From positions 32,223 through 96,222 of the forward strand of contig NIVC01003472.1 in the NCBI GenBank assembly GCA_002269645.1: 64,000 bases of DNA, written 5' to 3'. A program made the translations under genes and the position numbers. Origin of the DNA: Macrostomum lignano. Lineage: Eukaryota. Positions 5,203 through 52,900 of this stretch are shown piece by piece. How positions within the stretch are numbered: the first letter of the stretch is position 1; every line of letters starts with the position of its first letter. The notes beneath the pieces are model-generated. The model saw only the letters and a list, made by a program, of their open reading frames with translations, was not told the DNA's origin and made no database searches.

Positions 5203-7292
5203 TCAGTAACCTGTTGGTTCCGAATCTTCAGCCGTCTGAGCCGTTGTCCCATCGTGCGAGTGTCCGTGATGTCCGTCGAGAAAATCGGAGCACCGGTTCT
5301 GCAGTGCGGCGCCTCCGGTATCCATGCTCTCGCAGTGGGCCAGACGCTTCAGCATGATGGTGATGGCGGCAAGGATGCAGAGTGACAACAGCGCTAGGCC
5401 GCACTGGATTAGGAAGAAACCGGAGAAGTTCAGGCGATCGATGACCAGACCGGAGAATAGCGGCGCGGTGAGCATGCCCAGACCGGCTCCCAAGCGGCTC
5501 ATCGGGAAGGCCACGGAGCCGTCGAGGTTCATGACTTCCTCGGCGGTGGCGTACACCATGGTGTTCCCCGTGCCGATTGACAGGCCGGACACGAAGCCGA
5601 GCACGTACTGGAGCCCCTGCACCTGGCGGGTGAAGAACCACAAAAACAGAGTCAGCGCCAGGGTGGCCGAACCGCCCAGGTACACCAGGATGAGCTTGCC
5701 GCGGATATGGTCACCAAGCAGCATGCCGGTGACGTACATCAACGACTCGCCGACTGTGTAGCAAAGCTGCACTTTAGTTGCCTTCGTCTTGATCAGCACA
5801 GCCCAGTCGGAATCGCCTGCCGGCGTGGTGTTGTTATCAACAGAGCTGAACTTGGGCGTCGAACGGGATATCGAGTCGTATTCGAAGTCGTACAGGTTCA
5901 TAGCCAAGCTGTACATCACCATGTTATGCACTGTGCGCTGCAGAATCCACAGAGCAATCGGGGGTCGTTCGCGAATTTCCTTCAGAGTACAGAAGCCGAT
6001 AGTTCGCTTTTTCTGCTGCTGCTCCGGCTTCAGCTCATGCCGTTCGGACGGTCTGGCGCCGTCGCTGCTGGCGCTCTCGGAGGCAGCCTGCTTGTCCAGA
6101 TCGTCGTAGTCAAGCCGCTTCGGCTCGTAGACAAATCCGGCTACGAGCATCTCGATTAAGAACACGACGCCCATGAATCGAAAGGCGTTCCGCCAGCCGT
6201 CCTCTCGGATCCAGTAGGCGTAGATCGGGCAGAAGATAATGGCTCCGAATGGCCCGCCGGACACCAGCGTGGTGGCCAGCACGTGGAATCGATGATTCCT
6301 ATCGAAGTACTCGCCAACAATCAGCGCCGCCGAAGTCATGGCCAGAGCGGAGCCGACTCCGTGGATGACGGTGTGTGTGAGGAACATCCAGCCAGGGCTT
6401 GGCATGTAGGACGACGCCAGACAGCTGATGAAGATCAGAACTCCGGCGATAGTCGAGGCCAGGCCGTAGTGACGGCCGTAAGTCAGCAGCGCGGTGGCCA
6501 CGAAGGGCATCAGGAAGAAGCCGGTCGCTGCGTAGCTGTCGCCTGGCAAATGAAATCGAAATCCGATGTTCTCTCATTCAAATTACTCTATAGTAGACAC
6601 CATTGCATTGAACCCTGGGTGTACACGCACATGGATACGTCAGAAGGTGTACATGTCGGTACTCCCGGACCACTGCCGGCTAGAGAACTGATCAACTGAT
6701 TAATAGTCCTAGTCCTATTTCAAAAAGCACGCGAAGACGGCAATAACTCGTAGTTTTGCGTTTGTTCTGTCGTGAATTTACAAGTATATCGTGTTTTTAT
6801 TTCTGTACGAGCTACTACTGAAGAACGCAATGAATCACACTGTCAACTTAATTGCAGTGTTTCTAACTGGATTTTCTTAGAAATGAACTGGGGGCCTAGC
6901 GACGATTTTTCCTGACCGAATTTGTCTATGGCCAAACTCCAATCAGCGCTATGCGTTCTCTGACCTTCTCGGACCTCTGACCGGATTCCGGTCTTTGCTT
7001 GTCAGTTGTCATTCCTCAATGCATGAGAAATTTGACATTTAAAAGCCACAAACCAGAAAGATATATTTGAGCTCAGCTCACCGATCATGTTCAGCTCCAG
7101 TTTAGTACTATTGAACTGTTCGTGCAGCTCGCCTAGAAAGATGGAAAAGCAGCGCCTTTTGCCGCCAACAAGAATGACGCTGGCGGCAGCGAACGCTAGG
7201 ATGAACAGGTGGCGGTACCTGAAGAAGATCGACTCGCACCATTGGAAGCAGCTTCTGGCCTTGTCCGCGGCCGTTGAAACTCCCTGCTGCAT
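5203..7292 (-). CDS. MFS transporter, monocarboxylate transporter (SLC16/MCT)-like
   Basis: Exon 1 7292-7082 (MQQGVS...FSIFLGELHEQFNSTKLELNMI) joins in phase 1 to exon 2 6542-5203 (GDSYAATGFF...IVGEYFDRNHRFH...GWRNAFR). About 12 hydrophobic segments and a large central loop. Confidence 0.85.
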
Positions 7293-9449: not shown

Positions 9450-11223
9450 TTAGCATGCGTCAAAACCGTGACAGAATTTCTTAGTTAGCATGCCGTTATA
9501 GTTGACGATGCACCAAGGAGCGTTATGCTCGCCAATGGGCGGGTTGTAGTACTTCCAGTAGAAACAGTAGTTGTGCTCGATAGGGGTGCTGGTGGCCAAA
9601 TTCCACAGCTCACAGGGCGCAGTTTTGGTCCGGTTGAATCGACTGAAGAAGAACCAGTCTGGAGAGTCCGGGTTGTAGCAGTCTGCAAAGATTGCCCCAA
9701 GAGGTTCAGCAAGGACTACTAAGTAAACTAGAAGGATTCAACACTCGAAATCTATGGAAACAATGTTTTGAAGGCCAATTTTTGTAGGAAAAAACACAGT
9801 ACGGAGATAGGAAGTTTTCATTTTCAGCACAAATATTGTTATTGCTTTCGATAGGAGGCAGATCCAGTGTTCTTCTTTTGATTTGTTGTGCCTTTCTTAT
9901 TGCTCTATTGATATTCATAATCGAAAGCAATCAAATCCTATCCTATCGAAATCCTATCGAAAGCAATAACAATTTTTGTGCTGAAAAGTAAAAACTCTCT
10001 ATTTCCGTTGTGTATTTTTCGGTGAAAAGTGGCCTTCAAAACATTTTCCATGAAATGCGAATGTCGCGTCCTGTATATACGTTGCTTTAGTTGTCCTTGA
10101 GGTTTAGCTTGCTGGCTAGTTAGTTCTGCATGGGGGGGGGGGGCACAGCCGACCAACAGCCTGCAAAAAGGCAAGCATAGATGCCTATTATTACACTTCT
10201 ATGCATATCTTGAATGTAGTCTCCAGCCTGTGGCTTAATTAATGTGTTCTCCATCGGCAATTATATTCCTTTCATCCTTGGTTGCTCAACTTCTTTCAGT
10301 TTTATCTGTTTGGCAAGTCGACTTCTTTTGCACTATAAATAGAGCAAGACAAAATAGATATATAGCTTATCTATAAGGATTCTTTGTATACAGGGATGTT
10401 TGCGGTCTGGGGGATGCTTGCGCTCTGGGTGATGCTTGCAGTCTGGGGGATGCTTGTGGTCTGGGGGATGCTTGCGGTCTGGGGGATGCTTGCGATCTGG
10501 GAGATGCTTGCGGTCTGGGGCCGGATGCTTGCTATCTGGGGAATGCTTGCATGCTGTCTGGGAGATGCTTGCATGCTGTCTGGGTGATGCTTGCATGCTG
10601 TCTGGGTGATGCTTGCTGTCTTAGGATGTTTTCTTTTTAGAGGGAATGTCTTTTGTTTTGTCGTTGTCTATTTGTTACTTGTAAAGAACAAAGATTCTAT
10701 CCAGAATTCCCCCATTGGGGGGCGAAGATTGCTAGTAGATATATAAATCTTCACATGAGGGGTCGTGTGCACCCTGGCGCACAGCCGATTCTGCCCACTC
10801 CGCAGACTCCTGAGCACACACAAGCGCGTCAAATACTGCACGCAGGCACAGCACTCACACACACGCTCACACAGGGTGTACACAACAGCCCTGACTTTCT
10901 AACCTCATGCCTGAGTCCTGAGAATCGTACGACAAGCCCCCCCCACTGGTCAATGAATGTGAATTCTTTAGAATAATAAAAATAACCAAATCATTCTTAC
11001 ATTGCGAACTGATATAGCAGGACTGGTTTCTTTCCGGGCAATTGTGCAGCAAAATGCCGCCGCCGAATTCCAGAAATTTATCCGAGTTTCTCAGCGCGTA
11101 GAGGTGCTCTGGCTTTCTGTGCGGGTCGCCAGGATTTGAATGGGAGCCGATAGAGCAGATGTGGAATGCTACTAGAACTGCTACGGAGACCAGCAGGTGG
11201 ATTCTTAGGCTTGAATTGGTCAT
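9450..11223 (-). CDS. Small secreted protein (~151 aa) with a C-terminal divergent kringle domain
   Basis: Exon 1 11223-11001 (signal peptide MTNSSLRIHLLVSVAVLVAFHICSIGS; donor t|gtaaga) joins in phase 1 to exon 2 9682-9450 (acceptor ctttgcag). Exon 2 reads CYNPD...TAPCELWN...HNYCFYW...APWCIVN...KFCHGFDAC*, six Cys in kringle order. Confidence 0.75.
9755..10050. mobile_element. MITE/foldback element with ~100-bp inverted arms (kringle gene intron)
   Basis: 9755-9857 (...cagcacaaatattgttattgctttcgatagga) is the reverse complement of 9952-10050 (tcctatcgaaagcaataacaatttttgtgctg...). Confidence 0.7.
10370..10735 (+). mobile_element. Short non-autonomous Helitron-like element with 18-bp minisatellite
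   Basis: 18-bp array (ggggatgcttgcggtctg) at ~10395-10620, then a 3' end homologous to 50590-50661: hairpin cccccattgggggg followed by CTAG|T. The 5' end (a|tctata at 10370) is tentative. Confidence 0.6.
10765..10910 (-). repeat. Diverged fragment of SINE family B
   Basis: gtgtgcaccctggcgca...cacaagcgcg...cacacagggtgtaca resembles 1258-1400; a similar piece occurs at ~51005-51040. Confidence 0.5.
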
Positions 11224-12904: not shown

Positions 12905-15041
12905 CTATTGTCCGTTTTGATCTGCAGCTGACTTTGTGGCATCCGCAGCGGTCGCTGCCTCAGCCTCGGCCTCTTCCCGTTCCAAGTCGTCCCAGTTCTG
13001 CGCTTCGCACTGATAGTTCAGCAGCGGATAGGCCTTCACCAACAGGGCGAGGCAGACCGCCATTATGCCGGCCAGCAGGATGAACACCAGCCACGGCAGG
13101 ACGTGGAGTCCACCGCCAAGCAGTGGGCCGCCGAGCAGGGCCACGCACATAACAGTGCGAAACACGCCCTGAGCCATGTCGGTCTCGCTGTCAGGGACTG
13201 CTTTAGTGTACATGCTCTCCGGCAGGGCCGAGGTAGCCGTCAGGCCGAGCACCTGGATGCTGGTGCTAATGATGATCAGCGTGATGTAGACAGCCGGCTT
13301 CCTAGTGTCCACGTACACAAGCAGAGCAAAGTTGAAGAAATATGCGCCCAGCAACAGGCAGATGGCTAGCAGCAGCAGGTATCGCTCCTGCTGACGGGCC
13401 AGGAAGAGTCGGAACGCGACGTAGATCAGCACGATCTCAATTCCGCAGCCAAGGTACACCAGGCTAATGTTGAACTCGTCCCAGTGGAACAGGTGGCTCA
13501 GCAAGGGCGACAGCACGGACTCGAAGGCTAGCAGGCAAAAGTAGCCGGCAAAGGCGATGAAAATCATCGAGAATATGTCAATGCGAAAGTACATGCGCAA
13601 CTTCTCAGGATCGGTGTACTTTCGCACCGAATGGCCCAGATCGTCGCAGATTGTTGTTGTCGATTCAGTTGTCGGCGTCTTGTCCGACTGCTCCGACGAC
13701 TCCTCGGAAGTTTCGGGAGATTTTTCAACAGCCGATGCTTCAATGGAGTCGTGCGGGATGTCCGGGTATACCAGAATGACCGCGATGGTGTGAATGGCCC
13801 ACAGGAAGGCCATGAACAGCCCCGGCGAGTTGTACACATCGATGACAAACTGATTCACCTCGGCGTGAATCGGGTGCATCAGCATCGTGAGCGCGGGGCC
13901 TGGTTGGATTATAAAGTGACGCCCAAAATTAGTTCCATAATCAATTTACAATGCAATAATGCTAATATTGTAACAAAATTTCGGTGGGTATTATAGAATT
14001 TAACCATCAGAAACCGATTAAGGCGCGAGGCGAAGAGAAGGACTGTCGAGCGCTTTATATGTCCCCGTGTACTTTAATTATTTGCTACTTGCCGCTATAG
14101 TGTTGAAGAAGCATGCAGTCGTCCAAGAGGGTTGAGCTCCTCGAGGCTGGAGAAAGCTGGGAAAGAGAGAAACGATCACTTTGCTTGGCTTTTGCACTCC
14201 ATGGCGCATAGACTAAAGGCCCGTTCTATAAAGCCATCGTAAGATAATATTGTTCTTATCTCCTATCTCCGCAGTGTAAAAGTTCCGACGTACGTTCAAA
14301 CTTACGCTACGACAGCTTTATATTACGACCCCTAAGTCAAGATGCAGCCAAGGCCCCTCGCAGGCAGCGTATGGAGGATTTTCAGTTTGTCTGTCAAAAG
14401 CCCTACTGGTCCCATATACCATTAAACGTAGCAAATTATAAATCACCTGCAATAATACCGAACTGCTTCACCAGCAGCAGGTGCACCATGAAGCTCGTTC
14501 GCTCTTTCTTGCTGGTGACGCGAACGACATCGGCGTACAGCGGCGGCTCGGCCGCGGACCCGGCGCCGGCGACGAATCGGCCGAAGAAGACAAGCCAAGG
14601 CGCCGGCGCAGTGAAGTAGATGAAGTTGCCGCAAATCTCTAACAGATTGGCCACGACTATCAGCAGGCGAACTCGAGCAAAGCGTCGCTGGGAGAGCCAA
14701 CCGAACAGTGGGTTGCACAGCAGCGGGAGCAGGTTGAATCCGGCCAGCGTGGCTCCGTAGAACTGCGCTCCGGCCGACGAGTGGAATTTGTTGAGATACA
14801 ACCAGAGAGTCGGCAGGATGATCACCCTCTCGATGCCGGTGAGCAGGCCCCAGCTGCCACCGATGATGCCAACTCGAGTTTTGGCCGAGAGCGGGAACAG
14901 GCCGCGGAACCAGTCGCAGCATCGGCACCGACCTCTTGGACAGCACTTGTCGATGTCTTCATTCGATATTAGTGATGTGCTCTCCTTGCAGGCGGTGGCT
15001 GAAGTCACTGGCGGGTTCTGCTCTGCCGCCTGGTTTTCCAT
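12905..15041 (-). CDS. MFS transporter, MFSD8/CLN7-like (~529 aa)
   Basis: Exon 1 15041-14447 and exon 2 13899-12905 join in phase 1 (GIIA-G-PALTML). Motifs LFGWLSQRR, GNFIYF, FFGRFVAGAGS, YADVVRVTSKKERT and IDVYNSPG are typical of MFSD8-family proteins. Confidence 0.85.
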
Positions 15042-15690
15042 GGCCTCTCCAATTCGCGCTCTGAAGCCCCCGCTAGAAAGTTCAGCGAATCCTTTTTATC
15101 CCGCTTGGTGGCGCGATTCCCAGTTGCGGTGCGCGCGGTTGTCGAAATGAGTCCGTCCAGCTTATGGCCCGCTATTATCTGACTCTTCCTGTATTATTGA
15201 GTTCTTCTACTCAAGCCACAGCTCTCATGACTTGAGCTCAGCGCAGGGGAGGCGACTTGCGCGCAGAAACAGTTTTTTTCATTCTGCCAGCGCTGTCAAA
15301 ATCGATAAGCACTGCACAGTCGCGAGTGGCTATTGGAGTCGAACGCAAACGAACAGAAATAGCATAACGTAGACACAGCAACTCACATTAATATAAGCAG
15401 AAATAAAGCTTTGGCTTTTCTATAGGAACAGCTGCAGTGTTGACTGCTTCTCATTGAGTGCTCACGCTTTCGATTGCTGCTGCCTCTGCTCTCAGCAACC
15501 ACCCACGCCAGAAAGTCACAATTGCTTGAGAGTAAATTCTTCACAGCAATAACCATTGAACATTTGTTGGGAAAAAGTTTTACTAAAGATTTCCACATAT
15601 TTTCTCATCCGGAATGCAGTTAATACCCTGCTCTTGTCTGCCAACAAAATTTACTTCAATAAAGTGGAAAAAAGTAAAGCCATTCGGTGA
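15035..15690 (-). promoter_or_regulatory. Upstream region of the MFSD8-like gene, homologous to TOP1 intron 2 sequence
   Basis: Reverse complement aligns to 46150-46446 plus 50662-50997, up to and including gccATGGAxAACCA. Confidence 0.75.
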
Positions 15691-15929
15691 AATTCAACCA
15701 GAATTTCATGTAAACGGGCAGGCGACAATACTACTATCTAGAATTCTTAGAATTTGGTATTTAAATTACCATCTTTATTGTTTATTGCGATCTCATGTCT
15801 TTATAAAGGGATCTTGGCTTTATTTTTCTTTTTGTATTGAAATTTCAGCGCAATTTTTCGGTTTTTATGTCCGTTTGCATAAAAAGCTTGCAAACAAATT
15901 AAAGAGTGATTTTTTAGTAAATTGATGTC

Positions 15930-16950
15930 CTTACTAGTGAGTCTATCCGTGGAGTCAGGAGTTTTATCTATAAGTTCGTGAGTTTATAAATAAGTTAGGG
16001 ACTTTATGAATGAGTTCATGAGTTTACGGATGATTTTGTAATTTTGATGGATGAGTTTATTAGTTTATGGTTGAGTTCGTGCGCTTTTTGGATTATTTCA
16101 TACAGACCTAAGTTGTCTATGGCCTTCTATTCCCTTGTCTTTATAATGCTTATATATAAGAAATAAAATACGCTCGTAAAATAATAAGTGACAAGGAAGA
16201 ACATGTTTTTGAGTAAAACAGGCATCACTTCAAAGTCGCCTCTGTTACTGAAACGTAACATCGCAATGGTGAGAGAGCATGCTGGTCACGCAACGACAGA
16301 GAAAAAGCATATCCTCTCCAGCAAAGCAGCTGTATGCACTTTTTATTCTCAATTCAGCGGCTTGGGGTGAACGCCCTGTATAATAGAAAAAAGCCTCTGA
16401 ATTTGAAATGAGCAACGAGCTTTTGTGGTCGATGTTCATCAATAAAGAAAATGTGGAAGGATCCGTTTGATTGAGACAAATTTCCTTTGTGCAATAGAAA
16501 TGTCAGTTAAAGCATCAGGTTTCAGGTGCAATATACCCATATTGTCTAAGTCTAGCGTTGCTGCTTACATTAGCTTGTCATTGATTTATCACTTACAGGC
16601 AATGTCAAAACAATGTTCTGAGAAAGCAGAACTCATTAGGTCGATACGTAATCTGCATAACTCATGTGGCAAACAACAGAAAGTGCATTTGATCCATGAA
16701 AAATCCTGGCAAGCAAGCGTGCAGAAGGGGCTTGTAAGAAAGCAAGTTTGTGTTTAAACATGAAGAGAAAAAAATTAGACACAAACTCACTCATTCGAGA
16801 CTCCTAAACTTGCTAATTAGCTAATTAATAAAGTCAGAACGAACTAACTCATCAATTCATCAACTCATCAACTAACCCAAATAACGAACTCATCGGCTCT
16901 TTAACTCATGAAAAACGTGTTCACCTTCTGCAACTCACTCATAAGCACGC
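15930..16950. repeat. Degenerate element with inverted tgagtt/aactca subterminal arrays
   Basis: Many tgagtt motifs at 15940-16080 and many aactca motifs at 16785-16945; no clear TSD. Confidence 0.35.
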
Positions 16951-17002
16951 TTAAATTTCTCAATTTGCTAATCAATCAAACAACATCTGTAAAGCTTGGC
17001 GG

Positions 17003-18097
17003 TCACTTACAAATCAGGCACAGGCTGGCGAGCCCGCCACCACGGCCACTGTACGAGACCGCATCTGTTGAGGTCCGTCGGTCGCCTTTGGACGAGCCGC
17101 TTTGTACTTCCTCAGCGTTGTCAGCGCCGTCTGGGTCAGCCCAGGCTTCGACAGCTCTGCCGGGACGGCCGACATCAGCTCCGCCTGGGTTCGTCGACGT
17201 CGATGCCGCTGCAGCCGCAGCGGCCGCCGCAACAGCCGTTGCTGCTATCGAGACGCCCCCACCGCCGCTGCTGCTTCCGCTACTGGCGCCACCGCCGCTA
17301 AACGAGCTGAACTCAAAGTCGAATTTGTGCTGCACCGTCCAGTGAGCAATGAGCACGGCCGATTGCAGCTGCTCGATGAGCTCCCGAGTGGCGCGAGCCT
17401 CAGCAGACAGGGACATCAGGTGATGAGCGTCGGCCTCCGTGCTCGGGAAGTCAGCATCGGGAGTGCCGCTGCTGCCGCTTGCGCCGCCGCCGCCGTTGCT
17501 ACCCAATACGGAGATGCGGCTGCCGCTGCTCATGGAGCTCCGTCGTGAGGAGCGCAACGAGCTGCTCAAGCTGAGAATGGACCGACGCTCCACGTTGTAG
17601 AAATCGGCGATTCCAGTCGCCACAAACCGGTTGAGACTGTCAGCGTGCAGTGGAAATCGCTTAACTAAACTAGCCGTGCGAAGCAAATTGTCCAGCGTCG
17701 ATTCGATGATTTGCACGAAGGTGGTGTACCTGGCCTCCCATTGCTTGCGCGTGGCTGCCGCTTCGCTTTCTTCATCGTCGGCGCTGTTGTTGCCGGGACC
17801 CGCCAGAGCCTGCTGGCTCTGCATAGCCGGCAGGATGACGTCCTTGGAGACGGTGAAGCTCGCAAGGAGGCGCACGGACAGCGACTGGAGCTGCTCTCGG
17901 ACCCTGGCGCAGTCGGTTACAGTGCCAACCTGACAAAGCAGCTGCTTGTACTGGGCGAGGACGCGGTTTAGAGAGCGCAACGAGCTGTTGAACTGCTCCA
18001 ACGAAGTGATCGGACACACTGAGCTCATGCGCTGACTTTGTACGCCACGTAGTGCTGCTCGCCAGGGAGTCTTCTTGACTGAAATGCCGAGGCGCAT
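17003..18097 (-). CDS. R7BP/R9AP (RGS7BP/RGS9BP)-like membrane anchor for RGS proteins, single exon
   Basis: N-terminal helical region LNRVLAQYKQLLCQVGTVTDCARVREQL resembles the R7BP helical bundle; C-terminal LASLCLICK has a Cys pair like the palmitoylated R7BP tail. Start may be 18097 or 18028. Confidence 0.65.
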   Translation of the reverse strand: MRLGISVKKTPWRAALRGVQSQRMSSVCPITSLEQFNSSLRSLNRVLAQYKQLLCQVGTVTDCARVREQLQSLSVRLLASFTVSKDVILPAMQSQQALAGPGNNSADDEESEAAATRKQWEARYTTFVQIIESTLDNLLRTASLVKRFPLHADSLNRFVATGIADFYNVERRSILSLSSSLRSSRRSSMSSGSRISVLGSNGGGGASGSSGTPDADFPSTEADAHHLMSLSAEARATRELIEQLQSAVLIAHWTVQHKFDFEFSSFSGGGASSGSSSGGGGVSIAATAVAAAAAAAAASTSTNPGGADVGRPGRAVEAWADPDGADNAEEVQSGSSKGDRRTSTDAVSYSGRGGGLASLCLICK

Positions 18098-20362
18098 TGC
18101 GGATGTGATGCGAGTGCATAAGCTTTAGATTATCTTAGTCGTAACTCAATGATGCTTATTTAAACTTGAATTGCTGCGCATGCATGCGTTACATTGTACT
18201 TTTATTATATCCATAGATATATGTGTACAACAATAGTAATAAGTTAATGAGCATTGCGAATGATTTTTTTTCCAAATAAATGTGATGCAAATAAATATGT
18301 ATATTAATATAACATGTGATTCTGTATAACACTTTAATGTTGGATAGATTTTAAAAAAGGTTTGTGCCAAAAGTTATCCGTCTGTAATATGTTTTTGATT
18401 CAAAGGCGATGCTAATAATGTTTTTGCGATGAGTAGATAAACAATAATAGCAATATTAATTAACAAACAAAATAGCCAACAACAAGCAGGAGTTTTACCA
18501 CCGGCTGCAGGAAGACGGTCGGACATGGCGCAGTTTTGACTGTTGACAGCTATTTGGCGTAAGCAGAATGATTGTTACACCTTATTGCTACGGCTGATTG
18601 CCAGAAAATTCTAGTTTCACTCAAGAAAAAAATTATTTCATACATTAGAAATAGAACAGTTTTGATAACAGTCGCTACAGTAGCCAGGAGTTTCTATTCC
18701 TCAGGGGCGCCATCGTGAAGGCGCCATCGTGAGGGCTTTTGCTAGCCTATTGGGCCTCATCCCCAGCAACGCCCCTGGGACCTACAGAATCTGGTAGAAG
18801 CAAATTAAAGTAAACTGATACAACTAACGAAACACGTTACAAGAAATCCTACATATTACAAGTAAATTGCTTACCTGAGTGAAACTTTAAACCTTGTGTG
18901 ATTTCTTAGATTCAGATTTGAAGACTGCAGTCGACGTTTCTTCACCAGATATTCAACCAGTCAAAACGGTTGACACACAAAGTCACAACTTTTATACCAC
19001 AGCTCCGGGTTTTTGCTATGGCAACTCACGAAGCGATTTCTAAGATACTTCGATTGGAGACAGGAAACTGGATAGGCGATGATGCCGTTCTTAGGAAGCA
19101 CTCGAGCACAGCCTCGGTCGACACGCTCCTAAGTACTGGGAAAGTGCCAAAGCTGACCAGCAGCTGCGCAAGCTTGATACAGGAAGTAGCGAACAGACTG
19201 GGGTTTGATGCATTAGCTAAATGACTATCAAGTATTTTAGTACCGAGATGTCGACAGCTTGCCAGAAGAGAAATTGGATTGCTATCGACTCAGTTTAATA
19301 GCCATTTTGTGTGGAGTTACATGCGTCTAGACTCAGAAAAAGCGCACATCGTACGCCTCTTCCCTCATGTTTTTTCTCTTTCCCTAAAAATCAGTCTTAC
19401 TCCGTTTCTAACTGATACGTAACGTTTCGTACAATCACAAACGCGGAGGAAGGGTTGTCGACAGGTTGACTCGATTTGAGTCCAGTCACCCCCCCTCCAG
19501 CCGCTCACCTGGGCGCGACTCCTCTAGCTAACTGCAATTCTTATGCATGTAGCGGAGTCTGAAATTTGATGGGGAAAGAGAGAGAGGCGGAGGGCGGGTC
19601 CAGAACAGGCTGCAAGAGGACGCATCTCTGCGCGATGAGCGAGTCGTAGCAGCCTGAAGGCTCAACTTCCTTCCCTACTACTCCAGGAGAGATTCCTCTT
19701 TCTCTCTCTCTCTCGTCCCAACCCCGGGCGAGCAGACACATCGGGTACGCGGTCGTCGTGTTGTTTTTTTTGCGGAGCGATGCCATTAAGGTCGCCTATG
19801 TATTTTTTGGTACGACTGCACAAGAATTACGGATGCGAGGAACACGGGAAAGACATTTGAGAAGGCTTGCTTGAGTCAGGTGCGTCTGCGAGCGTATAAG
19901 AGGCTTGCATCTCAAGACTGCTGAACCAGCTACTCATATGACGTGCTTGTTTTACCTGGCTTGCTAATTGAGCAAGCTTTCAATATATTTCATACTAAAA
20001 TAAGCAGGAGGCAAGAAAACTGGAGTATATATAAATTGTACCAGCAAAGAGCCTTGTGTACTTTCTTTTTTACAATCCTGATGATAACGTACAGTGTCGA
20101 ATTAAGGAATAAATTCGCGTATTTTGCTTTACTAACTATACAGCTGATTTTGGCTAAAGTAATAGGCGAGGTTATATACAGAATATTTACGGAAGCTTTT
20201 TGACTGCATGACTTTAGTGCAGTGACACTGCACCCAAGCAGCGAGAGATCTGTGATCGGTGCTACTTTCTCAATCTAAAATGCTACGACTCTTCGGGAGA
20301 ATTACTGAAATTTCAAGGCTTACGGGGGGGGAAGAATTCCTGAGATATCAAATCAAGGCTTT

Positions 20363-33674: not shown

Positions 33675-33930
33675 AACAGGCAGGCAGGTGCACTTTAAGC
33701 GACATTGTCGCACAACCGGCGAGAGGCATTACGCTCGTACAGCGGCCCTAACTTTATTTATCGTTAGGCATGTACACTTCACTGTGCCTTGGGGGTTGCC
33801 CTCAAGCTGGACGTTAATTGCATGTGCAGAGCCAAGCCGAGATTCCAATTTAGCCCCAAATTAATGTGACTGCACTTGGAATCGAGCCTAGGCCGCTGGA
33901 ACATCAGAGCACCGCTCTAGACCAGTAGGC
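33675..33930 (-). mobile_element. tRNA-derived SINE, family B copy 2 (internally deleted)
   Basis: Minus-strand head tagcctactgg (A box) ... ggctcgattcc (B box); body matches 1275-1530 with ~80 bp missing. Confidence 0.75.
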
Positions 33931-43973: not shown

Positions 43974-46900
43974 ATGACCAACGCTGATCCAATTAACGGC
44001 TCGGGCTCTCCGGCCACAACCGCAGCATCGGCCACTGCAGCAGCAGCTGCCGCCGTCTCCGCCATCAAGCCAGACCCGGATGGCTGTAGTAGCAGCGACG
44101 ACGATGTTCCGCTGTCGAAGAAGTTCAGCTCCGTTGTCTCGCAGAAGAAGCAGAATGGCGGCAAGCGAGCCAACAGTGGCGAAGACTCGTCACCGTCTCC
44201 TGCCAGTAAGAAGCCGAAGACTGAGCCGACCACTCCGACTGCTCAGAGTCCTATTAAAACGCCAAAGAAAGAGCCGACATCGCAGAAGAAGAAAGTCAAA
44301 ACAGAGGCCGACCAAAAGAGGCCAGCTACGGCTAAAAAAGAGGACAAGAAAAAAGTGAAAGCCGAGTCTGACAGCAAGCGCAGGAAATCTGAGCCAGTTG
44401 CTAAGCCGAAACGGGAGCGCAAAACTGCGGAACCAGCCCCCGAAGTTTGGCGCTGGTGGGAGGAAGAGAAGCCAACAGACGGCAGCAAGTGGCGCTTTCT
44501 CGAGCACAAAGGTCCGGTGTTCGCGCCCGACTACGAGCCTCTGCCTAAGAATGTGAAATTCTATTACGACGGAGAGCAAATGGTGCTCACTCCGGAGGCT
44601 GAAGAGGTGGCCGGCTTCTATGCTAGAATGTTGGATCACGACTATACTAGCAAGGAGTCATTCAATAATAACTTCTTTCAGGTTAGTTTTTGGTCTTTTC
44701 TAGTATGGTTTGCCCGTGTTCTCACTTGGTGTGCTACTCCCTTGGTTCATGGACCTCTGGATGTCTTTTCTTTGTTCATGGACTTCTGGGTGTCTTTTCT
44801 TTGTTCATGGACTTCTGGGTGTCTTTTCTTTGTTCATGGACTTCTGGGTGTCTTTTCTTTGTTCATGAACTTCTTGGTGTCTTCTTTGTTGGCGGAAGTC
44901 TGTTTCTTTTTTTCATGGACTTCTGGGTGTCTTTGTTCATGGACTTCTGGGTGTCTTTTCTTTGTTCATGGACTTCTTGGTGTCTTTTCTTTGTTCATGG
45001 ACCTCTGGGTGTCTTTTATTTGTTCATTGACTTCTTGGTGTCTTCTTTGTTGGCGGGTGTCTGTGTGTCTTTCCTTTGTTCATGGACTTCTGTGTGTCTC
45101 TTTTTCTTCATGGACTTTTGGGTGTCTCTTGTTCATGGACTTCTTGTTGTCTTTGTTGGCGAAAGTCTGTTTTTCCTTTGTTCATGGACTTCTGTGTGTC
45201 TTTTGTTCATGGAATTCTGTGTATCTCTTTTGTTCATGGACTTCTGTGTGTCTCTTTTGTTCATGGACTTCTGTGTGTCTCTTTTGTTCATGGACTTCTG
45301 TGTGTCTTTTGTTCATGGAATTCTGTGTGTCTCTTTTGTTCATGGACTTCTGTGTGTCTCTTTTGTTCACGGACTTCTTGGTGTCTTCTTTGTTGGCGGA
45401 AGTCTGTTTTTCCTTTTATTGGTGGACTTCTTGGTGTCTTTCTTTTGTTCATGGACTTCTAGGCGTCTTGCTTTGATGTTTCATAGACTTCTATGTCTAG
45501 GCGTCTTTCATTTGTTCATGGACCACTGGATGTCTTTTCTGGATTTGTTCATAAGCCTCTAGGGTAGTTCATTCTTTTGCCATGGACCTCTAGTCTTATA
45601 ATTTCAGTTCTTGGATTTTGAGCCGTGTAAATCCCTTTGGTATTTGGACTTATTTAATAAGCATTTCTTTGGCAAATTGTATTATAATAGAGTAATTTCT
45701 CATATTTAAGATAAATATGACATAATTAGTAATACTTTAAGCCTACTGTCGTTCGCACCTTCCCCACCCGCAGGACTGGCGCAGCGTGATGTCGCATGCC
45801 GAGCAGAAGCGCATTAAATCTCTGGCCAAGTGCAATTTCACCGAAATTCACGAGTTTTACAAGCGTCAAGCTGAGGAGAGAAAGAATCGAACTAAGGAGG
45901 AGAAGCAGAAGCTCAAAGAGACAAACGAGAGAGTGACGCAGGTTTGTTATGCTGCAATGTTTGTTTAAATTACATAGTAATTAAATTAGATAGTAGAGAT
46001 ACCACTCTACGCCCCGGGGTCGTTAGAGTCGAAGACAATCAAACGCCTCAAATTGACTCTCAGACGACCTGCAACCACTCGGGGTGGCCTGAGGTTGGCC
46101 CTCGTGTGTTTGAATCGCAGGACCTCGGTCATGAGAGAACAATTGGAAGTGTTTTACTTTTTTCCAATTTTTGGAGTAAATTTGTTGGCAGACAAGAGCA
46201 GGGTATTAACTGCATTCCGGATGAGAAAATATGCAGAAATGATTTAGCTGAAACTTTTCCCAACAAATGTTCAATGGTTATTCGCTGTGAAGAATTTACT
46301 TTTAAGCGACTGCGACTTTTTGGCGTGGGTGTTGCTGAGAGCAGAGGCAGAGTCAGCAGGTACCGAAAGCGTAAGGTCCCAAAGAAAAGCCAAAGCTTTA
46401 TTGCTGCTTATACTAGTTAATATGAGTATTAATGTGAGTTGCTGTATCTTCCTATATACTAAAAATGAGTTGTCTGTATGTATGTGGGTAGGTATGCGAT
46501 AGATTTCAGAAAAAATGGCTCAACCGATTTTCTTCAAACTTGCACCATTCGATCAGAAATTTTCCTGGGACGGTACATGCATCTTGGCTAAAAAATTGCT
46601 CAATATTAAAGGGATTAAATATTCGAAAAACAGGCTTTTTTGCAAAGGTCAAGCGGCTCTTTCGATCTGAAATGCATTGTAAGAATGCTAGAGAAAAAAC
46701 TGACTGACTGAATTTCAATTCTGATAAAGATTGCATCACAACAAGTTGAAAACAGTGCCAAAGAAATGCACACACAACTTGATTGAAATTGCGTAACAAT
46801 ATTGCTAACTTAAATTGACACTGATACTGGCTGACTAAGAAATTGATTATGTCATAACTTTTTACTCTAACCGATTTGCTATAAGAATTAAATTATAAGG

Positions 46901-49900
46901 GCCACAATTCAAGACAAGAGATAGCATAGATGCGAACAGACTGGACTGCTAATGCTGCGACCTGGGTTCGAATGTTAGTAGTGCAAAAAGATTTTTTTAT
47001 TCAAAAATCTTAAAAACACAAAATGCTAAACACAAAAAAGCACAATGTCAAACATTAAAGAGCCACCATGTCAAACATTAAAGAGCCACCATGTCGACCA
47101 TTAAAGAGCCACCATGTCGACCATTAAAGAGCCACCATGTCGAACATTAAAGAGCTAACCATGTCGAACATTAAAGAGCCACCATGTCGACCATTAAAGA
47201 GCCACCATGTCGAACATTAAAGAGCCACCATGTCCAACATATACATGACTCCATGTTGAACATTCAAGAGCTACCATGTCAAACATATACATGACGCCAT
47301 GTCGAACATAAAAGAGCCACCATGTCGAACATTAAAAAGCCACCATGTCAAACATTAAAGAGCCACCATTTCAACCCTAAAAGAGCCACCATGTCGAACA
47401 TTAAAGAGCCACCATGTCAAACATTAAAGAGCAACCAGGTCAAACATATACATGACTCCATGTCGAACATTGAAGAGCCACCATGTCGAACATTAAAGGG
47501 CCACCATGTCAAATATTAAAGGGCCACCATGTCAAATATTAAAGAGCCACCATGTCAAACATTAAAGAGCCACCAGGTCAAACATGAAAGTGCCACCATG
47601 TCTAACATTAAAGAGCCACCATGGCAGACATATACATGACTCTATGTCGAACATTCAAGAGCTACCATGTCAAACATATACATGACTCCATGTCAAACAT
47701 TAAAGAGACACTATGTCAAACATTAAAGAGCCACCAGGTCAAACATGAAAGTGCCACCATGTAACACATTAAAGAGCCACCATGTCGAACATTTAAGAAC
47801 CACCATGTCAAACATAAAATAGCCACCATGTGAAACATATACGTGACTTCATGTAAAACATTAAAGAGCTACCATATCAGACATATACATGACTCCATGT
47901 CAAACATATACGTGACTCCATGTTAGACATTAAAGAGCCACCATGTCGAACATTAAAGAGCCAACATGTTAAAAATACAAGAGCCACCATGTCAAACATA
48001 TACATGACTCCATGTCAAACATTGAAAAGACACCATGTCGAACATAAAAGAGCCACCATGCAAAACATTAAAGAGACACTATGTCTAACATTAAAGAGCC
48101 ACCATGTCGAACATTTAAGAGCCACCATGTCAAACATATACATGACTCCATGTTGAACATTCAAGAGCTACCATGTCAAACATATACATGACTCCATGTT
48201 GAACATTCAAGAGCTACCATGTCAAACATATACATGACGCCATGTCGAACATAAAAGAGCCACCATGTAAAACATATACGTGACTCCATGTCAAACATTG
48301 AAGAGCCACCATGTCGAACATAAAAGGGCCACCATGTCAAATATTAAAGAGCCACCATGTCAAACATTAAAGAGCCACCAGGTCAAACATGAAAGTGCCA
48401 CCATGTAAAACATTAAAGAGCCACCATGTCGAACATTTAAGAACCACCATGTCAAACATAAAATACCCAACATGTGAAACATATACGTGACTCCATGTAA
48501 AACATTAAAGAGCTACCATATCAGGCATATGCATGACTCCATGTCAAACATATACGTGACTCCATGTTAGACAATTAAGAGCCACCATTTCGAAAATTAA
48601 AGAGTCAACATGTTAAAAATACAAGAGCATCCATGTCAAACATATACATGACGCCATGTCAAACATTGAAGAGACACCATGTCGAACATAAAAGAGCCAC
48701 CATGCAAAACATAAAAGAGCCACCATGTCTAACATTAAAGAGCCACCATGTCAAACATATACATGACTCCATGTCAAACAGTAAAGAGACACTATGTCAA
48801 ACATTAAAGAGCCACCATGTCGAACATTTAAGAGGCACCATGTCAAACATATACATGACTCCATGTTGAACATTCAAGAGCTAACATGTCAAACATATAC
48901 ATGACGCCATGTCGAACATTAAAGAGCCACCATGTCAAACATTATAGAGCCACTATGTCGAACATTTAAGAGCCACCATGTCAAACATATACATGACTCC
49001 ATGTTGAACATTAAAGAGCCACCATGTCGAACATTTAAGAGCTACCATGTGAAACATATACATGACTCCATGTCGAACATTACAGAGCCACCATGTCAAA
49101 GATAAAAGAGCCACCATGTCAAACATAAAAGAGCCACCATGTCAAATATTAAAGAGCCACCAGGTCAAACATGAAAGTGCCACCATGTAAAACATTAAAG
49201 AGCCACCATGTCAAACATATACGTAACTCCATGTCAAACATTGAAGAGACCCCATGTCAAACATTAAAGAGCCACCATGTCGAACATAAAAGAGTCACCA
49301 TGTAAAACATATACGTAACTCCATGTCGAACATTGAAGCGACACCATGTCGAACATAAAAGAGCTACCATGTCAAACATTAAAGAGCCACCATGTCAAAC
49401 ATATAAGTGACTTTATGTCGAACATTAAAGAGCCACCATGTCTAACATTAAAAAGCCACCATGTCCAACATTAAAGAGCCACCATGTCAAAAAGTAAAGA
49501 GCCACCATGTCTAACATTTAAGAGCCATCATGTCAAACATTAAAGAGCTACTTTGTCTAACATTAAAGAGCCACCATGTCAAACATTAAAGAGCCACCAT
49601 GTCAAACATTAAAGAGCCACCATGTCAAACATAAAAGAGCCAACTTTTTGAACATTAAAGAGCCACCATGTCAAACATAATAGAGCCACCATGTCAAACA
49701 TAATAGAGCCACCATGTCAAACATTAAAAAGCCACTTTGTCAAACATAGAAGAGCTCCCATGTCAAACATAGAAGAGCCCCCATGTCAAACATAGAAGAG
49801 CCCCCATGTCAAACATAGAAGAGCCACCATGTCAGACATTGAAAAGCCACCGTATCAAACATAAAAGAGTTACCATGTACGAGCGTAGAACAAAAAAGAG

Positions 49901-52900
49901 CCACAATGTATAACATAAAAGAGCCACAATGTATAACATAAAAGAGCCACCCTGTTAAACATAAAAGATACACAATTTCAAACGTAAAAGTAAGCGAATT
50001 TTAAAGGAGCCGCTATAATGCTAAGGAAATTGTCGCACTAGCTACTTATTGTCTGGTGGATGCTTACTATTTGGGGATGCTATCTATCTTGGGGATGCTT
50101 GCTATCTTGGGGATGCTTGCTATCTGGGGGATGCTTGCTATCTGGGGGATGCTTGCTATCTGGGGGATGCTTGCTATCTGGGGGATGCTTGCTATCTGGG
50201 GGATGCTTGCTATCTGGGGGATGCTTGCTATCTGAGGGATGCTTGCTATCTGGGGGATGCTTGCTCTCTGGGGGATGCTTGCTATCCGGGGATGCTTGCT
50301 ATCTGGGGGATGCTTGAAATCTGGGGGATGCTTGCTATCTGAGGGATGCTTGCTATCTGGGGGATGCTTGCTATCTGGGGGATGCTTGCTATCTGGGGGA
50401 CGCTTGCTATCTGGGGGATGCTTGCTATCTTGGGGATGCTTGCTATCTGGGGATGCTTGCTATCTTGGGGATGCTTGCTATCTGGGGGATGCTTGCTATC
50501 TGGGGGATGCTTGCGGTCTTGGGATGATTTCTTTTTGCAATGCACTTCATTTGAGCAGTTTGTCTGTTGTCTTTTTGAAGGATTTTTGGCTGTTTTTTTG
50601 TTACTTGTAGAGAACAGAGATTCTATCCAGATGTCCCCCATCGGGGGGCGAAGATTGCTAGTCATTATGCTATTTCTGTTCGTTTACGTTCGACTCCAAT
50701 AGCCACTCGCGACTGTTTATGCCTATCGATTGAAAAAAAAGTTTCTGCGCGCAAGTCGTCTTCCCTGCGCCGAGCTTCAGTCATAAGCTGTGGCTTGAGC
50801 AGAATTTAATAATACAGGATCGGAAGAGTCAGATAATAGCAGGCCATAAGCTGGGCGGATTCAGCGCATAATCCGATAGCCGCGCGCACCGCAACTGGGA
50901 ATAACGCCACCATTCGGGGGTAAAAAGGATTCGCTGAACTTTCTGGCGGAGGGGCGGGGGGCTTCCGAGTGCGAATTGGCAAGGCCATGGACAACCACGA
51001 TCACACAGGGTGTACAGCGACGACCCTGACTTTCTAGTCGTCGGGTATGTACACTCTCGGTGCCCTGGAGATGGGCGTGAATCCCACGATAACCAGGGGT
51101 TGCGGTGGCTCGAGAGTCACTTATGTCCACAGATTTTTTTTTATTAGAGGCAGGGGGTTGTGTGCAACCTGGCGCAATTTAAGCGTCATTGCCACACAAC
51201 CGGCGAGAGGCATTACTGCCCATTCCGCCGACTCCCCTGAGCAGGCATACAAGCGCGCGGATACGTACGCAGGCACACACTCACACAGGAGTGTACAGCG
51301 GCCCAAACTTTATTTTATCGTTAGGCATGTACACTTCACTGCGCCTTGGGGGGTTGGCTCTCAAGGCCGTTAATTGCACAAGCGAGCCAAGCCAAGATTC
51401 CAATCCAGCCCCAAATTAATGTGGCTGCACTTGGAATCGAGCCTGGGTCGCTGGCACACCAGAGCAGCTGCGCTACCGCTGTGCTACGCCCCCCCCCTTA
51501 TGTCCACAGATACTATGATAATAATAATGATATTAACATTACATATTAGTATCATAAATAATTAGCAGATCTGTAGACATGGAGATATCAGTCCTACCAC
51601 CGCCTCCCATCGCGCAGGAGTTCGGCCACTGCACTCTGGACGGTCACAGGCAACGAATCGGCAACTTCAAGATCGAACCGCCCGGCCTGTTCCGCGGCCG
51701 CGGCAGCCACCCAAAGATGGGCAAGCTGAAACGCCGGGTCCAACCGGAGGACGTCATCATCAACTGTAGCAAAGATTCGGCCGTGCCGAAACCGCCGCCA
51801 GGTCACAAATGGAAGGAGGTCCGTCACGACAACACAGTGAGCTGGCTAGCCTGCTGGGTAGAGAATGTGCAAGGCAATTTCAAATACGTCATGCTGAACG
51901 CCGCCAGCCGACTCAAAGGCGAAAAGGATTGGAAGAAGTACGAGACCGCTAGGCAGTTGCACAAAGTCGTGGACAAGATTCGATCGCAATACCGGGCCGA
52001 TTTCAAAAGCAAAGAGATGCGACTCAGACAGCGATCGGTGGCTCTGTACTTTATTGACAAATTGGCGCTCAGGTGAGGCTGCTATTGTGTCTGTTTGTCT
52101 GACGTTCCTGAGTAGCTGCTGGTTTGGAGATTTGCGGTCTCATAGCCAACCCGCTGTCTCCCTGATGTCCTGAAATCCTCGTGACACCCTGAAATCACTT
52201 TGACATCCTGAGATCACTCTCAGACTCTGAGATCTCTCTGACATCCTGAGATCTCTCTGACATCCCGACCCGAGATCACTCTAAGACCCTGAGATCACTC
52301 TGACATCCCGAGATCACTCTAAGACCCTGAGATCACTCTAAGACCCTGAGATCACTCTGACATCCCGAGATCACTCTAAGACCCTGAGATCACTCTGACA
52401 TCCCGAGATCACTTCAAGACCCTGAGATCACTCTGACACCCTTAGATCACTCTGACACCCTGAGATCACTCTGACATCCCGAGATCACTTCAAGACCCTG
52501 AGATCACTCTGACACCCTGAGATCACTCTGACACCCTGAGATCACTCTGACATCCCGAGATCACTTCAAGACCCTGAGATCACTCTGACACCCTGAGATC
52601 ACTCTGACACCCTTAGATCACTCTGACACCCTGAGATCACTCTGACACCCTGAGATCACTCTAAGACCCTGAGATCACTTTAAGACCCTGAGATCACTCT
52701 GACACCCTGAGATCACTTTAAGACCCTGAGATCACTCTGACACCCTGAGATCACTTTAAGACCCTGAGATCACTCTAAGACCCTGAGATCACTCTGACAT
52801 CCCGAGATCACTCTAAGACCCTGAGATCACTCTGACATCCCGAGATCACTTACGAGGGGCATCCCAAAAGTCCGTTCAGTACGTGCCGTTTTTACCATAA

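What the first reader, a model, noticed from the sequence alone, without database searches (positions are those of the whole stretch)
15035..15690. Upstream region and start codon of the MFSD8-like gene are duplicated, inverted, inside a TOP1 intron
The ~650 bp immediately upstream of the MFSD8-like ATG (15041, minus) aligns to TOP1 intron 2 at 46150-46446 plus 50662-50997. Homology runs right through gccATGGA(A/C)AACCA and then stops. Shared strings include aaaaaggattcgctgaactttct and cgcgcaccgcaactgggaat. Two readings are possible: a gene's promoter/5'UTR was copied 30+ kb away, or a repeat family supplied this gene's promoter, UTR and initiator codon (exaptation). The intronic copy points in the TOP1 sense direction with an ATG, so it could act as an internal promoter.
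Basis: partly seen in the sequence, partly recalled or inferred. Interest (0 to 1): 0.75.

Follow-up and report, generated by a model that had tools for sequence, protein, structure and literature searches.

The report
Gene promoter fragment carried inside a Helitron
About 650 bp just upstream of a flatworm transporter gene, including its start codon, has a second, decayed copy 31-36 kb away in a TOP1 intron, and that copy most likely got there as a gene fragment picked up by a Helitron-type transposon, which is a known kind of event.

Summary
Window 15031-15684 matches 46147-46449 plus 50662-50997 in inverted orientation (E 7e-80 and 3e-72; 87.6% identity without gaps). Homology ends 11 nt into the coding sequence.

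The window is Macrostomum lignano contig NIVC01003472.1. The gene is BOX15_Mlig009069g2, and ATG 15041 is its annotated start.

The two halves of the intronic copy (B) are separated by a precise 4,212-bp insertion of a multi-copy Helitron-like element (H1). B itself lies in about 0.92 kb of foreign DNA between AT-rich native intron sequence. That DNA ends in a Helitron-type 3' terminus at 46000, begins with TC after a host A, and has no target-site duplication. The gene-side copy (A) has none of these terminal sequences. It is flanked by unique DNA and by its own coding sequence.

My best reading (about 0.55) is that a non-autonomous Helitron captured the gene's 5' region and placed it in TOP1 intron 2. 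So the "promoter was copied" reading is supported. The "repeat supplied the promoter and ATG" reading is disfavoured but not excluded, because genome-wide copy number could not be measured. B's ATG opens only 16 codons, and nothing shows promoter activity.

This is a new example of a known kind of event, of modest interest.

The parts
15031..15684 (-). Copy A: the native 5' flank, presumed core promoter, 5'UTR, ATG and next 8 nt of the MFSD8-like gene BOX15_Mlig009069g2.
   Evidence: It is also present upstream of homeologues g1 and g3 at 98.6% and 97.4% identity over the BLAST segments spanning it.
12905..15041 (-). MFSD8-like MFS transporter gene: exon 1 is 15041-14447 and exon 2 is 13899-12905 (529 aa). 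The start codon is 15041-15039.
   Evidence: My two-exon model is 100% identical to NCBI PAA51273.1. Pfam MFS_1 matches both exons. Reading upstream from the ATG in frame there are 18 codons and then a stop, and no ATG occurs in any frame between 15228 and 15041.
15685..15851 (-). A piece of about 170 bp specific to g1 and g2, lying just distal to copy A. In homeologue g3 it is replaced by 47 bp that carry the 37-nt motif shared with B.
46090..46449 (+). Copy B, distal half. It includes the 37-nt motif at 46090-46126, which is shared with the g3 version of locus A.
   Evidence: (30/37 identical, 0 of 500 shuffles reach the score).
50662..50997 (+). Copy B, proximal half. It includes the ATG at 50987-50989, which opens only 16 codons.
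46450..50661 (+). H1: a 4,212-bp non-autonomous Helitron-like element (TCCTATATAC...hairpin...GATTGCTAG) inserted precisely into B. It carries a 23-bp array (about 125 copies) and an 18-bp array (26 copies).
   Evidence: The empty site rebuilt from B equals A with 3 substitutions. The same termini occur in L006 and at window 10709-10735.
46000..46089 (-). 3' terminal region of the proposed carrier element H2. A GC palindrome is followed by CGTAGAGTGGTA, and the element ends exactly where AT-rich native intron sequence begins.
   Evidence: After the palindrome, 10 of 13 positions match the H1 3' terminus.
50998..51134 (-). 5' region of the proposed H2. It is a SINE-core-like fragment, and the element starts with TC after a host A (reverse complement of ...CCACAGAT).
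51135..51496 (-). A tRNA-derived SINE inserted at the H2 5' end, with the 15-bp target-site duplication CTTATGTCCACAGAT (51120-51134 and 51497-51511).
45942..51617 (+). TOP1 coding intron 2. About 58 nt on the left and about 105 nt on the right look native (AT-rich). Everything between is inserted DNA.
10377..10738 (+). A second H1 fragment: the 18-bp array plus an identical 3' terminus ending CTAG|T.

Best explanation
Copy A (15031-15684, minus strand) is the native 5' region of the M. lignano MFS transporter gene Mlig009069g2: the promoter-proximal DNA, a short 5'UTR and the real start codon. Some time before the recent genome duplication, about 0.69 kb of this region was incorporated into a non-autonomous Helitron-like rolling-circle element, which I call H2. 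The captured segment ran from a GC-rich 37-nt motif upstream down to 11 nt inside the coding sequence. H2 is about 0.92 kb and lies on the window's minus strand from 51134 to 46000. It is a patchwork: a SINE-core-like fragment, then the gene fragment in antisense, then an 89-nt Helitron 3' end. H2 inserted at an A|T site into what had been a TOP1 intron of roughly 160 nt. Later a second Helitron-like element (H1, 4.2 kb, full of minisatellite arrays) inserted precisely into the captured fragment, and a SINE landed at the H2 5' end.

Shown here: the homology, the H1 insertion, the Helitron-type 3' terminus at 46000, and the absence of H2 terminal sequences at locus A. Inferred: that H2 is a single element, that the direction was gene to transposon, and that B is now inert.
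For: - **Real start codon.** The ATG at 15041 is the annotated start of PAA51273.1, and my independent model matches that protein 100%. The N-terminal tail aligns with that of a related Macrostomum sequence beyond the block boundary (score 47 vs 19.5 +/- 6.8 in shuffles; 5 of 2000 shuffles reach it). An ExxxL[IV] motif is shared by all paralogues.
- **Native locus.** Copy A is present and collinear in homeologues g1, g2 and g3.
- **H1 is a true Helitron-like family.** It has 5'-TC and 3'-CTAG, a subterminal hairpin, no target-site duplication, head-to-tail tandem copies and several copies sharing both termini. Removing it from B restores an uninterrupted sequence equal to A with 3 substitutions.
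- **Helitron terminus next to B.** The left edge of the foreign DNA in the intron (46000) is a Helitron-type 3' terminus homologous to that of H1. This motif class occurs only at H1 termini and here, and occurred in none of the 100 and 300 shuffles.
- **Clean insertion.** The right edge reads A|TC. There is no target-site duplication, and the native flanks are AT-rich.
- **Locus A lacks the H2 ends.** The H2 terminal 89 nt and 137 nt are absent from all three A loci within +/-10 kb. The A-B homology boundaries lie inside H2.
- **Ancestral motif.** The 37-nt motif next to B also sits next to A in homeologue g3, so it belonged to the ancestral gene locus.
Against: - Only one H2 copy was seen, so H2 as a single mobile unit rests on its termini alone.
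- Its last four bases are GGTA, not the canonical CTRR.
- Its 5' end does not resemble that of H1.
- The motif pattern used for the 3' terminus was written after seeing both ends, so the shuffle test is partly circular.
- Genome-wide copy number of the block is unknown.
- No outgroup can polarise the A/B differences.
- Homology ending only 11 nt after an ATG in good Kozak context is a coincidence under capture, although captured fragments that include the start of a gene are common in other species (my own knowledge, not tested here).
Confidence: 0.55

Rival explanations
1. One-off duplication without a transposon vehicle. A double-strand break in the TOP1 intron was patched by copying about 0.7 kb from the MFS gene's 5' region 31 kb away (templated or filler insertion). 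Alternatively, a larger inverted duplication was later whittled down. Either way the Helitron 3' fragment and the SINE fragment next to B are unrelated debris.
For: Only two independent copies exist in 64 kb, and there are none in 32 kb of an unrelated M. lignano locus. B has no target-site duplication, terminal inverted repeat or poly(A). The donor and the copy lie in cis and close together. The junction with the SINE fragment shows 2-3 nt of microhomology (sequence).
Against: It needs three unrelated fragments to sit side by side, bounded exactly by a Helitron-type 3' terminus on one side and A|TC on the other, with clean AT-rich intron outside. The 3'-truncated SINE fragment has no remainder on the other side of B, so extra deletions must be assumed.
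Confidence: 0.25
2. Exaptation. The block is part of an interspersed repeat family. One copy landed in the 5' end of the MFS gene and now provides its promoter, 5'UTR and initiator codon. B is simply another copy.
For: The genome is more than half repeats (PMC5730564). The N-terminal residues before the ExxxL[IV] motif vary in length and sequence among paralogues, so a new ATG could be tolerated. The gene is the divergent paralogue of its family. Among homeologues the block evolves about as fast as other intergenic DNA: 3.65% vs 2.95-5.76%.
Against: Neither edge of A carries a transposon terminus, target-site duplication or terminal inverted repeat. Where B continues into Helitron or SINE sequence, A continues into unique DNA and into coding sequence. 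An insertion into the coding sequence would have had to supply a promoter and an in-frame ATG in good Kozak context 11 nt from its end. No third copy was found in about 140 kb of M. lignano DNA examined.
Confidence: 0.15
3. Assembly artefact: a chimeric join or a collapsed or duplicated haplotype.
For: The assembly is known to be redundant and hard to build (PMC5730564), and the homeologues show a mosaic pattern.
Against: A and B differ by about 12%, by several indels and by a nested 4.2-kb insertion, and B has its own flanking elements. A misassembly would give near-identical copies.
Confidence: 0.02

Closest known systems
Gene-fragment capture by non-autonomous Helitrons. From my own knowledge, not checked in the library: maize Helitrons, and Myotis bat Helitrons that carry host promoters, 5'UTRs and first exons.
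   Same: A host fragment holding a promoter, 5'UTR and the first coding bases sits between Helitron-type ends. It is mixed with another unrelated fragment (SINE-derived). The element inserted without a target-site duplication at A|T, inside an intron of another gene.
   Different: Only one carrier copy was seen. Its 3' tetranucleotide is not CTRR. No autonomous RepHel element was identified. The capture is old (about 12% divergence) and the copy is disrupted. I found no description of Helitron capture in Macrostomum.
Transposon-derived promoters and first exons (exaptation), such as LTR- or MITE-derived alternative promoters.
   Same: A dispersed repeat overlaps a gene's upstream region, its UTR and its ATG.
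   Different: The gene-side copy lacks transposon boundaries, and the transposon hallmarks are at the other copy. This points to gene-to-transposon transfer rather than the reverse.
Templated (filler DNA) insertions at double-strand break repair sites.
   Same: A short patch copied from a nearby locus in cis, in inverted orientation, with no target-site duplication and with microhomology at one junction.
   Different: The patch is bounded by a Helitron-type terminus and a TC start, which filler insertion does not explain.
Helitron-associated tandem arrays and satellites. From my own knowledge: DINE-1-like elements in Drosophila and Helitron-linked satellites in bivalves.
   Same: H1 carries long internal minisatellite arrays and forms head-to-tail tandems.
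   Different: This concerns the element that split copy B, not the duplication itself.

Membership tests
Helitron-like non-autonomous element (H1, 46450-50661) | 5' terminus TC and 3' terminus CTRR | tested here: met
   TCCTATATAC...GATTGCTAG in the window. The same ends occur in L006 three times and at window 10709-10735.
Helitron-like non-autonomous element (H1, 46450-50661) | GC-rich hairpin about 10-15 nt upstream of the 3' end | tested here: met
   CCCCCATCGGGGGG lies 13 nt before the end and folds as a hairpin, although the folding energy is not unusual compared with shuffles.
Helitron-like non-autonomous element (H1, 46450-50661) | No target-site duplication, no terminal inverted repeats, precise insertion | tested here: met
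   The empty site rebuilt from B (GCTGTATCT|TCATTATGC) has the same length as A (GCTGTGTCTACGTTATGC), with 3 substitutions.
Helitron-like non-autonomous element (H1, 46450-50661) | Insertion between host A and T | tested here: inconclusive
   A|TC at L006 14160/14161, but T|TC in the window. A T follows the 3' end in both.
Helitron-like non-autonomous element (H1, 46450-50661) | An autonomous partner encoding the Rep/helicase protein | not tested
   No RepHel ORF was seen in the window (Pfam on the large ORFs).
Helitron-like carrier of copy B (H2, 46000-51134, minus strand) | 3' terminus with a subterminal palindrome, homologous to a known Helitron end of the same genome | tested here: met
   CCCCGGGGCGTAGAGTGGTA|T compared with GGGGGGCGAAGATTGCTAG|T. 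This motif class is found only at H1 ends and at 46000-46019, and in none of the shuffles. Caveat: the pattern was defined after seeing both ends.
Helitron-like carrier of copy B (H2, 46000-51134, minus strand) | Canonical CTRR at the 3' end | tested here: not met
   The last four bases are GGTA.
Helitron-like carrier of copy B (H2, 46000-51134, minus strand) | 5' TC after a host A, no target-site duplication, host T after the 3' end | tested here: met
   The reverse complement of ...CCACAGAT|ACTATG reads A|TCTGTGG, and the 3' end is followed by T.
Helitron-like carrier of copy B (H2, 46000-51134, minus strand) | More than one copy sharing both termini (evidence of mobility) | not testable with these tools
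   No second copy in the window, L005-L008. The M. lignano genome could not be searched as DNA. Metagenome and prokaryote-genome scans gave 0 hits.
Transposon-derived promoter / start codon (exaptation) at locus A | Transposon boundaries (termini, target-site duplication, terminal inverted repeats, poly(A)) at the edges of the gene-side copy | tested here: not met
   None at 15031 or at the distal edge in g1, g2 or g3. The flanks are coding sequence and unique DNA.
Transposon-derived promoter / start codon (exaptation) at locus A | A multi-copy family whose consensus reaches the ATG | not testable with these tools
   Two independent copies in 64 kb and none in L008. The genome-wide count is not available.
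MFSD8 / CLN7 transporter | MFS fold of about 520 aa with 12 transmembrane segments | tested here: met
   Pfam MFS_1 matches both exons, and the protein is 529 aa. This is generic to the MFS superfamily.
MFSD8 / CLN7 transporter | N-terminal acidic dileucine [DE]xxxL[LI] sorting motif | tested here: met
   ESTSLI at residues 20-25. ENSRLI, ENRGLV and ESRPLV occur in relatives. That this motif defines CLN7 is my own knowledge.
MFSD8 / CLN7 transporter | Orthology to human MFSD8 (reciprocal best hit) | not tested
   The named hits say only 'MFS domain-containing', and there is no PDB relative.

The most novel reading that the evidence does not exclude
The block belongs to a mobile repeat that carries a working core promoter plus a Kozak-context ATG. 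One copy replaced the original 5' end of a lysosomal-type MFS transporter paralogue and now starts its transcription and translation. The sense-oriented copy in TOP1 intron 2 can start truncated TOP1 transcripts.
Probability: 0.12. Interest if true: 0.55.

Novelty: new member of a known kind. Interest (0 to 1): 0.3.

Why it matters
If the reading is right, this is a clear, dissectable case of Helitron-type capture of a host promoter and start codon in a flatworm. I found no description of such capture in that group. M. lignano already has transgenesis and 5'-end (RAMPAGE) and spliced-leader read tracks, so both promoter activity and direction of transfer could be tested directly. It also shows how a short intron of a housekeeping gene grew from about 160 nt to 5.7 kb purely by nested insertions. 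For annotation, the message is practical: the copy in TOP1 is transposon cargo, not a second gene start, and ATG 15041 is a genuine start codon. The event itself is of a known type and probably has no function today.

Tried and rejected
- **Known RNA in the block.** Rfam found nothing, even at E<=10, and no tRNA was found.
- **Solo LTR.** The block's ends read TGG...CCA in both orientations, but there is no target-site duplication at either locus. Rejected.
- **Retrocopy of an antisense or upstream transcript.** AATAAA lies near the distal edge in A, but it is absent in B and B has no poly(A) tail. Rejected.
- **tRNA-SINE with the block as its body.** The 37-nt motif does not fold or scan as a tRNA. 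Dropped.
- **B inserted into a SINE.** The missing 3' part of the SINE is not on the other side of B. Rejected as a simple insertion.
- **External copies.** Exact-pattern scans of metagenome contigs and genome contigs with a block 23-mer and a SINE 22-mer gave 0 hits.
- **Homeologous TOP1 loci.** Ten window ORFs and my 747-aa TOP1 model are not in the protein collection, so the TOP1 intron in g1 and g3 could not be inspected.
- **Outgroup promoter.** L001 is a Macrostomum relative or paralogue at 69% coding identity. It shows no similarity upstream of its ATG, which is uninformative at that distance.
- **Constraint on A.** The block diverges among homeologues about as fast as other intergenic DNA, so conservation gives no evidence for or against function.
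- **Bacterial promoter scan**: not applicable to this organism.
- **PDB search** with the transporter: no hit.
Full report
**1.

A BLAST of the window against itself pairs 15031-15367 with 50997-50665 (E 7e-80). It pairs 15446-15678 with 46390-46153 (86.8%, E 3e-72). Short bridging hits reach 46449, and all hits are in inverted orientation.

A global alignment of the two copies, with the intervening 4.2 kb removed, has 694 columns: 522 matches, 74 mismatches and 98 gap columns. That is 87.6% identity at ungapped positions.

Homology runs through GCCATGGA(A/C)AACCA and stops at 15031 / 50997, which is 11 nt into the coding sequence. A profile of the two copies searched with nhmmer --max finds no third copy in the window.

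**2. Organism and genes.**

My two-exon gene model (15041-14447 and 13899-12905, 529 aa) is 100% identical to PAA51273.1. That protein is BOX15_Mlig009069g2 of Macrostomum lignano, assembly GCA_002269645.1, contig NIVC01003472.1. ATG 15041 is therefore the annotated start.
- Reading upstream from it in frame, there are 18 codons and then a stop.
- No ATG occurs in any frame in the 187 nt upstream.

The protein matches Pfam MFS_1 and carries an N-terminal ExxxLI motif. Its paralogues and a related Macrostomum sequence carry the same kind of motif. The N-terminal tails align significantly (5 of 2000 shuffles reach the score). I did not prove orthology to human MFSD8.

TOP1 (plus strand) has coding exons at 43974-44681, 45774-45941, 51618-52072, 55004-55586 and 56565-56894.

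**3. What separates the two halves of B.**

The 4,212 bp at 46450-50661 begin TCCTATATAC and end CCCCCATCGGGGGGCGAAGATTGCTAG. They contain a 23-bp array of about 125 units and an 18-bp array of 26 units.

Removing this piece gives GCTGTATCT|TCATTATGC. Copy A reads GCTGTGTCTACGTTATGC at that point, which is the same length with three substitutions. So the piece is a precise insertion with no target-site duplication.

The same termini recur at window 10709-10735. They also recur three times, head to tail with the junction CTAG|TCC, downstream of homeologue g1, where g2 and g3 have nothing comparable.

These are the hallmarks of a non-autonomous Helitron-type rolling-circle element. I call it H1.

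**4. What B is embedded in.**

The native intron sequence is AT-rich and short: about 58 nt after exon 2 (45942-45999) and about 105 nt before exon 3. Everything between is foreign.

- **Left edge.** Read on the minus strand, the foreign DNA ends ...GACCCCGGGGCGTAGAGTGGTA|T at 46000. This is a GC palindrome followed by a tail that matches the H1 terminus at 10 of 13 positions.
- **Rarity of that motif.** A pattern covering both ends occurs only at H1 termini and at this site in about 140 kb of M. lignano DNA. It occurs in none of 300 shuffles. A stricter pattern occurs in none of 100 dinucleotide shuffles. The pattern was written after seeing both ends, so this test is partly circular. The position, exactly at the GC-rich to AT-rich junction, is independent support.
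- **Right edge.** Once a SINE with a clean 15-bp target-site duplication (51135-51496) is removed, the foreign DNA begins A|TCTGTGG on the minus strand.

Between these ends lie three segments:
- 137 nt related to the core of the local SINE family;
- the block, in antisense;
- 89 nt of Helitron 3' region.

The simplest account is one Helitron-like element of about 0.92 kb (H2) carrying a mosaic of captured fragments. Points against this:
- The terminal tetranucleotide is GGTA, not CTRR.
- The 5' end is unlike that of H1.
- I saw only one copy.

**5. Direction of transfer.**

Homeologues g1 (L006) and g3 (L007) both carry copy A in the same position. Identity is 98.6% and 97.4% over the BLAST segments spanning it, and pairwise divergence among the three block copies is 0.5-3.7%. 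A and B differ by about 12%, so they split well before the recent duplication of the genome.

In g3, the roughly 170 bp distal to A in the window are replaced by 47 bp. These contain a 37-nt motif that matches B's left flank:
- 30 of 37 positions are identical.
- 0 of 500 shuffles reach the alignment score.
- The motif is found nowhere else in the sampled DNA.

So the ancestral gene locus and B shared about 0.69 kb, and the window copy later lost the distal end.

Beyond that shared unit, A continues into unique intergenic DNA on one side and its own coding sequence on the other. B continues into H2's terminal sequences. Those terminal sequences are absent within +/-10 kb of all three A loci.

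A transposon insertion at A would need three things:
- two deletions that removed exactly both termini;
- an in-frame fusion to the coding sequence;
- an ATG in good Kozak context 11 nt from the element's end.

Capture needs no such coincidences. I therefore favour gene-to-transposon transfer (about 0.55). Next comes a transposon-independent repair patch (about 0.25), then exaptation (about 0.15).

**6. Function.**

- B's ATG opens 16 codons.
- Its distal and proximal halves are 4.2 kb apart.
- The candidate trans-splice acceptor CTTCAG, 19 nt before the ATG in A, reads CTTCCG in B (acceptor motif and SL sequence from PMC8629364).
- A TATA-like ATAAAAAG lies 51-58 nt before the ATG in A and is mostly kept in B.

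Nothing here shows that B is active, so the internal-promoter idea stays speculative. Among homeologues, A diverges about as fast as the neighbouring intergenic DNA, so conservation neither supports nor denies promoter function. RAMPAGE and spliced-leader tracks exist for this genome (PMC5730564) and would settle the transcription start sites.

**7. What could not be done.**

- The M. lignano genome could not be searched as DNA.
- Exact-pattern scans of the metagenome and prokaryote collections were empty.
- An independent 32-kb M. lignano locus (L008) has no block, H1, H2 or SINE copy. That says little, because even the proven repeat families are absent from it.
- The homeologous TOP1 introns could not be fetched, because neither the window ORFs nor my TOP1 model are on record.

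Copy number is therefore the main open point.

**8. Verdict.**

The "copied promoter" reading is supported and gains a likely mechanism. The exaptation reading is disfavoured but not excluded. The phenomenon is a new example of a known kind, Helitron gene-fragment capture, in a species where I found no prior description. Interest is modest.

Noticed in passing
window 46450-50661 and 10377-10738; L006 14161-21600: A Helitron-like family (H1) carries long 23-bp and 18-bp minisatellite arrays. Three head-to-tail copies lie downstream of homeologue g1 and are absent from g2 and g3, so the family was active after the recent genome duplication.
   Followed up: partly
window 52850-54206: A mariner/Tc1-like element with perfect 31-bp terminal inverted repeats and a DDE_3 / HTH_32 ORF (53184-54131). 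It sits inside a tandem array (52169-52851 and 54206-54966) in TOP1 coding intron 3, and looks like a recent insertion.
   Followed up: no
window 51135-51496, 1248-1548, 33680-33919, 10758-10901: A tRNA-derived SINE family of about 362 bp. The copy at 51135 has an intact 15-bp target-site duplication and an A-tail. A fragment of a related SINE forms the 5' part of the proposed H2.
   Followed up: partly
L005, L006, L007 (homeologues g2, g1, g3 of the MFS gene); window 12905-20000: The relationship is a mosaic. Upstream region, block and exon 1 of g2 are closest to g1 (0.2-1.7% divergence vs 0.7-5.8% to g3, where only exon 1 is below 3.6%). Intron and exon 2 of g2 are identical to g3 (0 differences in about 1.5 kb) and 2.6-2.9% from g1. 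This points to recombination or gene conversion between homeologues, or to a mosaic assembly.
   Followed up: no
window 15685-15851; L007 9314-9360: The roughly 170 bp next to copy A in g1 and g2 have 10-nt inverted ends (CGGTGAAATT / AATTTCAGCG). In g3 they are replaced by 47 bp. This may be a small MITE-like insertion combined with a deletion.
   Followed up: partly
window 44740-45591: TOP1 coding intron 1 holds about 850 bp of degenerate tandem repeats. They keep the exon-1 reading frame open for another 260 codons or so, which could mislead ORF-based annotation.
   Followed up: no
window 15066-15061 (minus strand): CTTCAG, matching the published M. lignano SL trans-splice acceptor motif [T/C]TNCAG, lies 19 nt before the ATG. 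The SL's own terminal ATG would be out of frame with the gene. The motif is lost in copy B.
   Followed up: no
window 5203-6549 (minus strand): A second MFS_1 transporter ORF (448 aa) downstream of the MFSD8-like gene. It is unrelated to the MFSD8-like family by tblastn and is not annotated in the record's gene list.
   Followed up: no
window 51120-51134 / 51497-51511 versus 51570-51585: The SINE target site CTTATGTCCACAGAT has a near-perfect inverted copy (ATCTGTAGACATGGAG) about 58 nt downstream, in what I called native intron. So part of that native sequence may itself come from a small foldback element.
   Followed up: no
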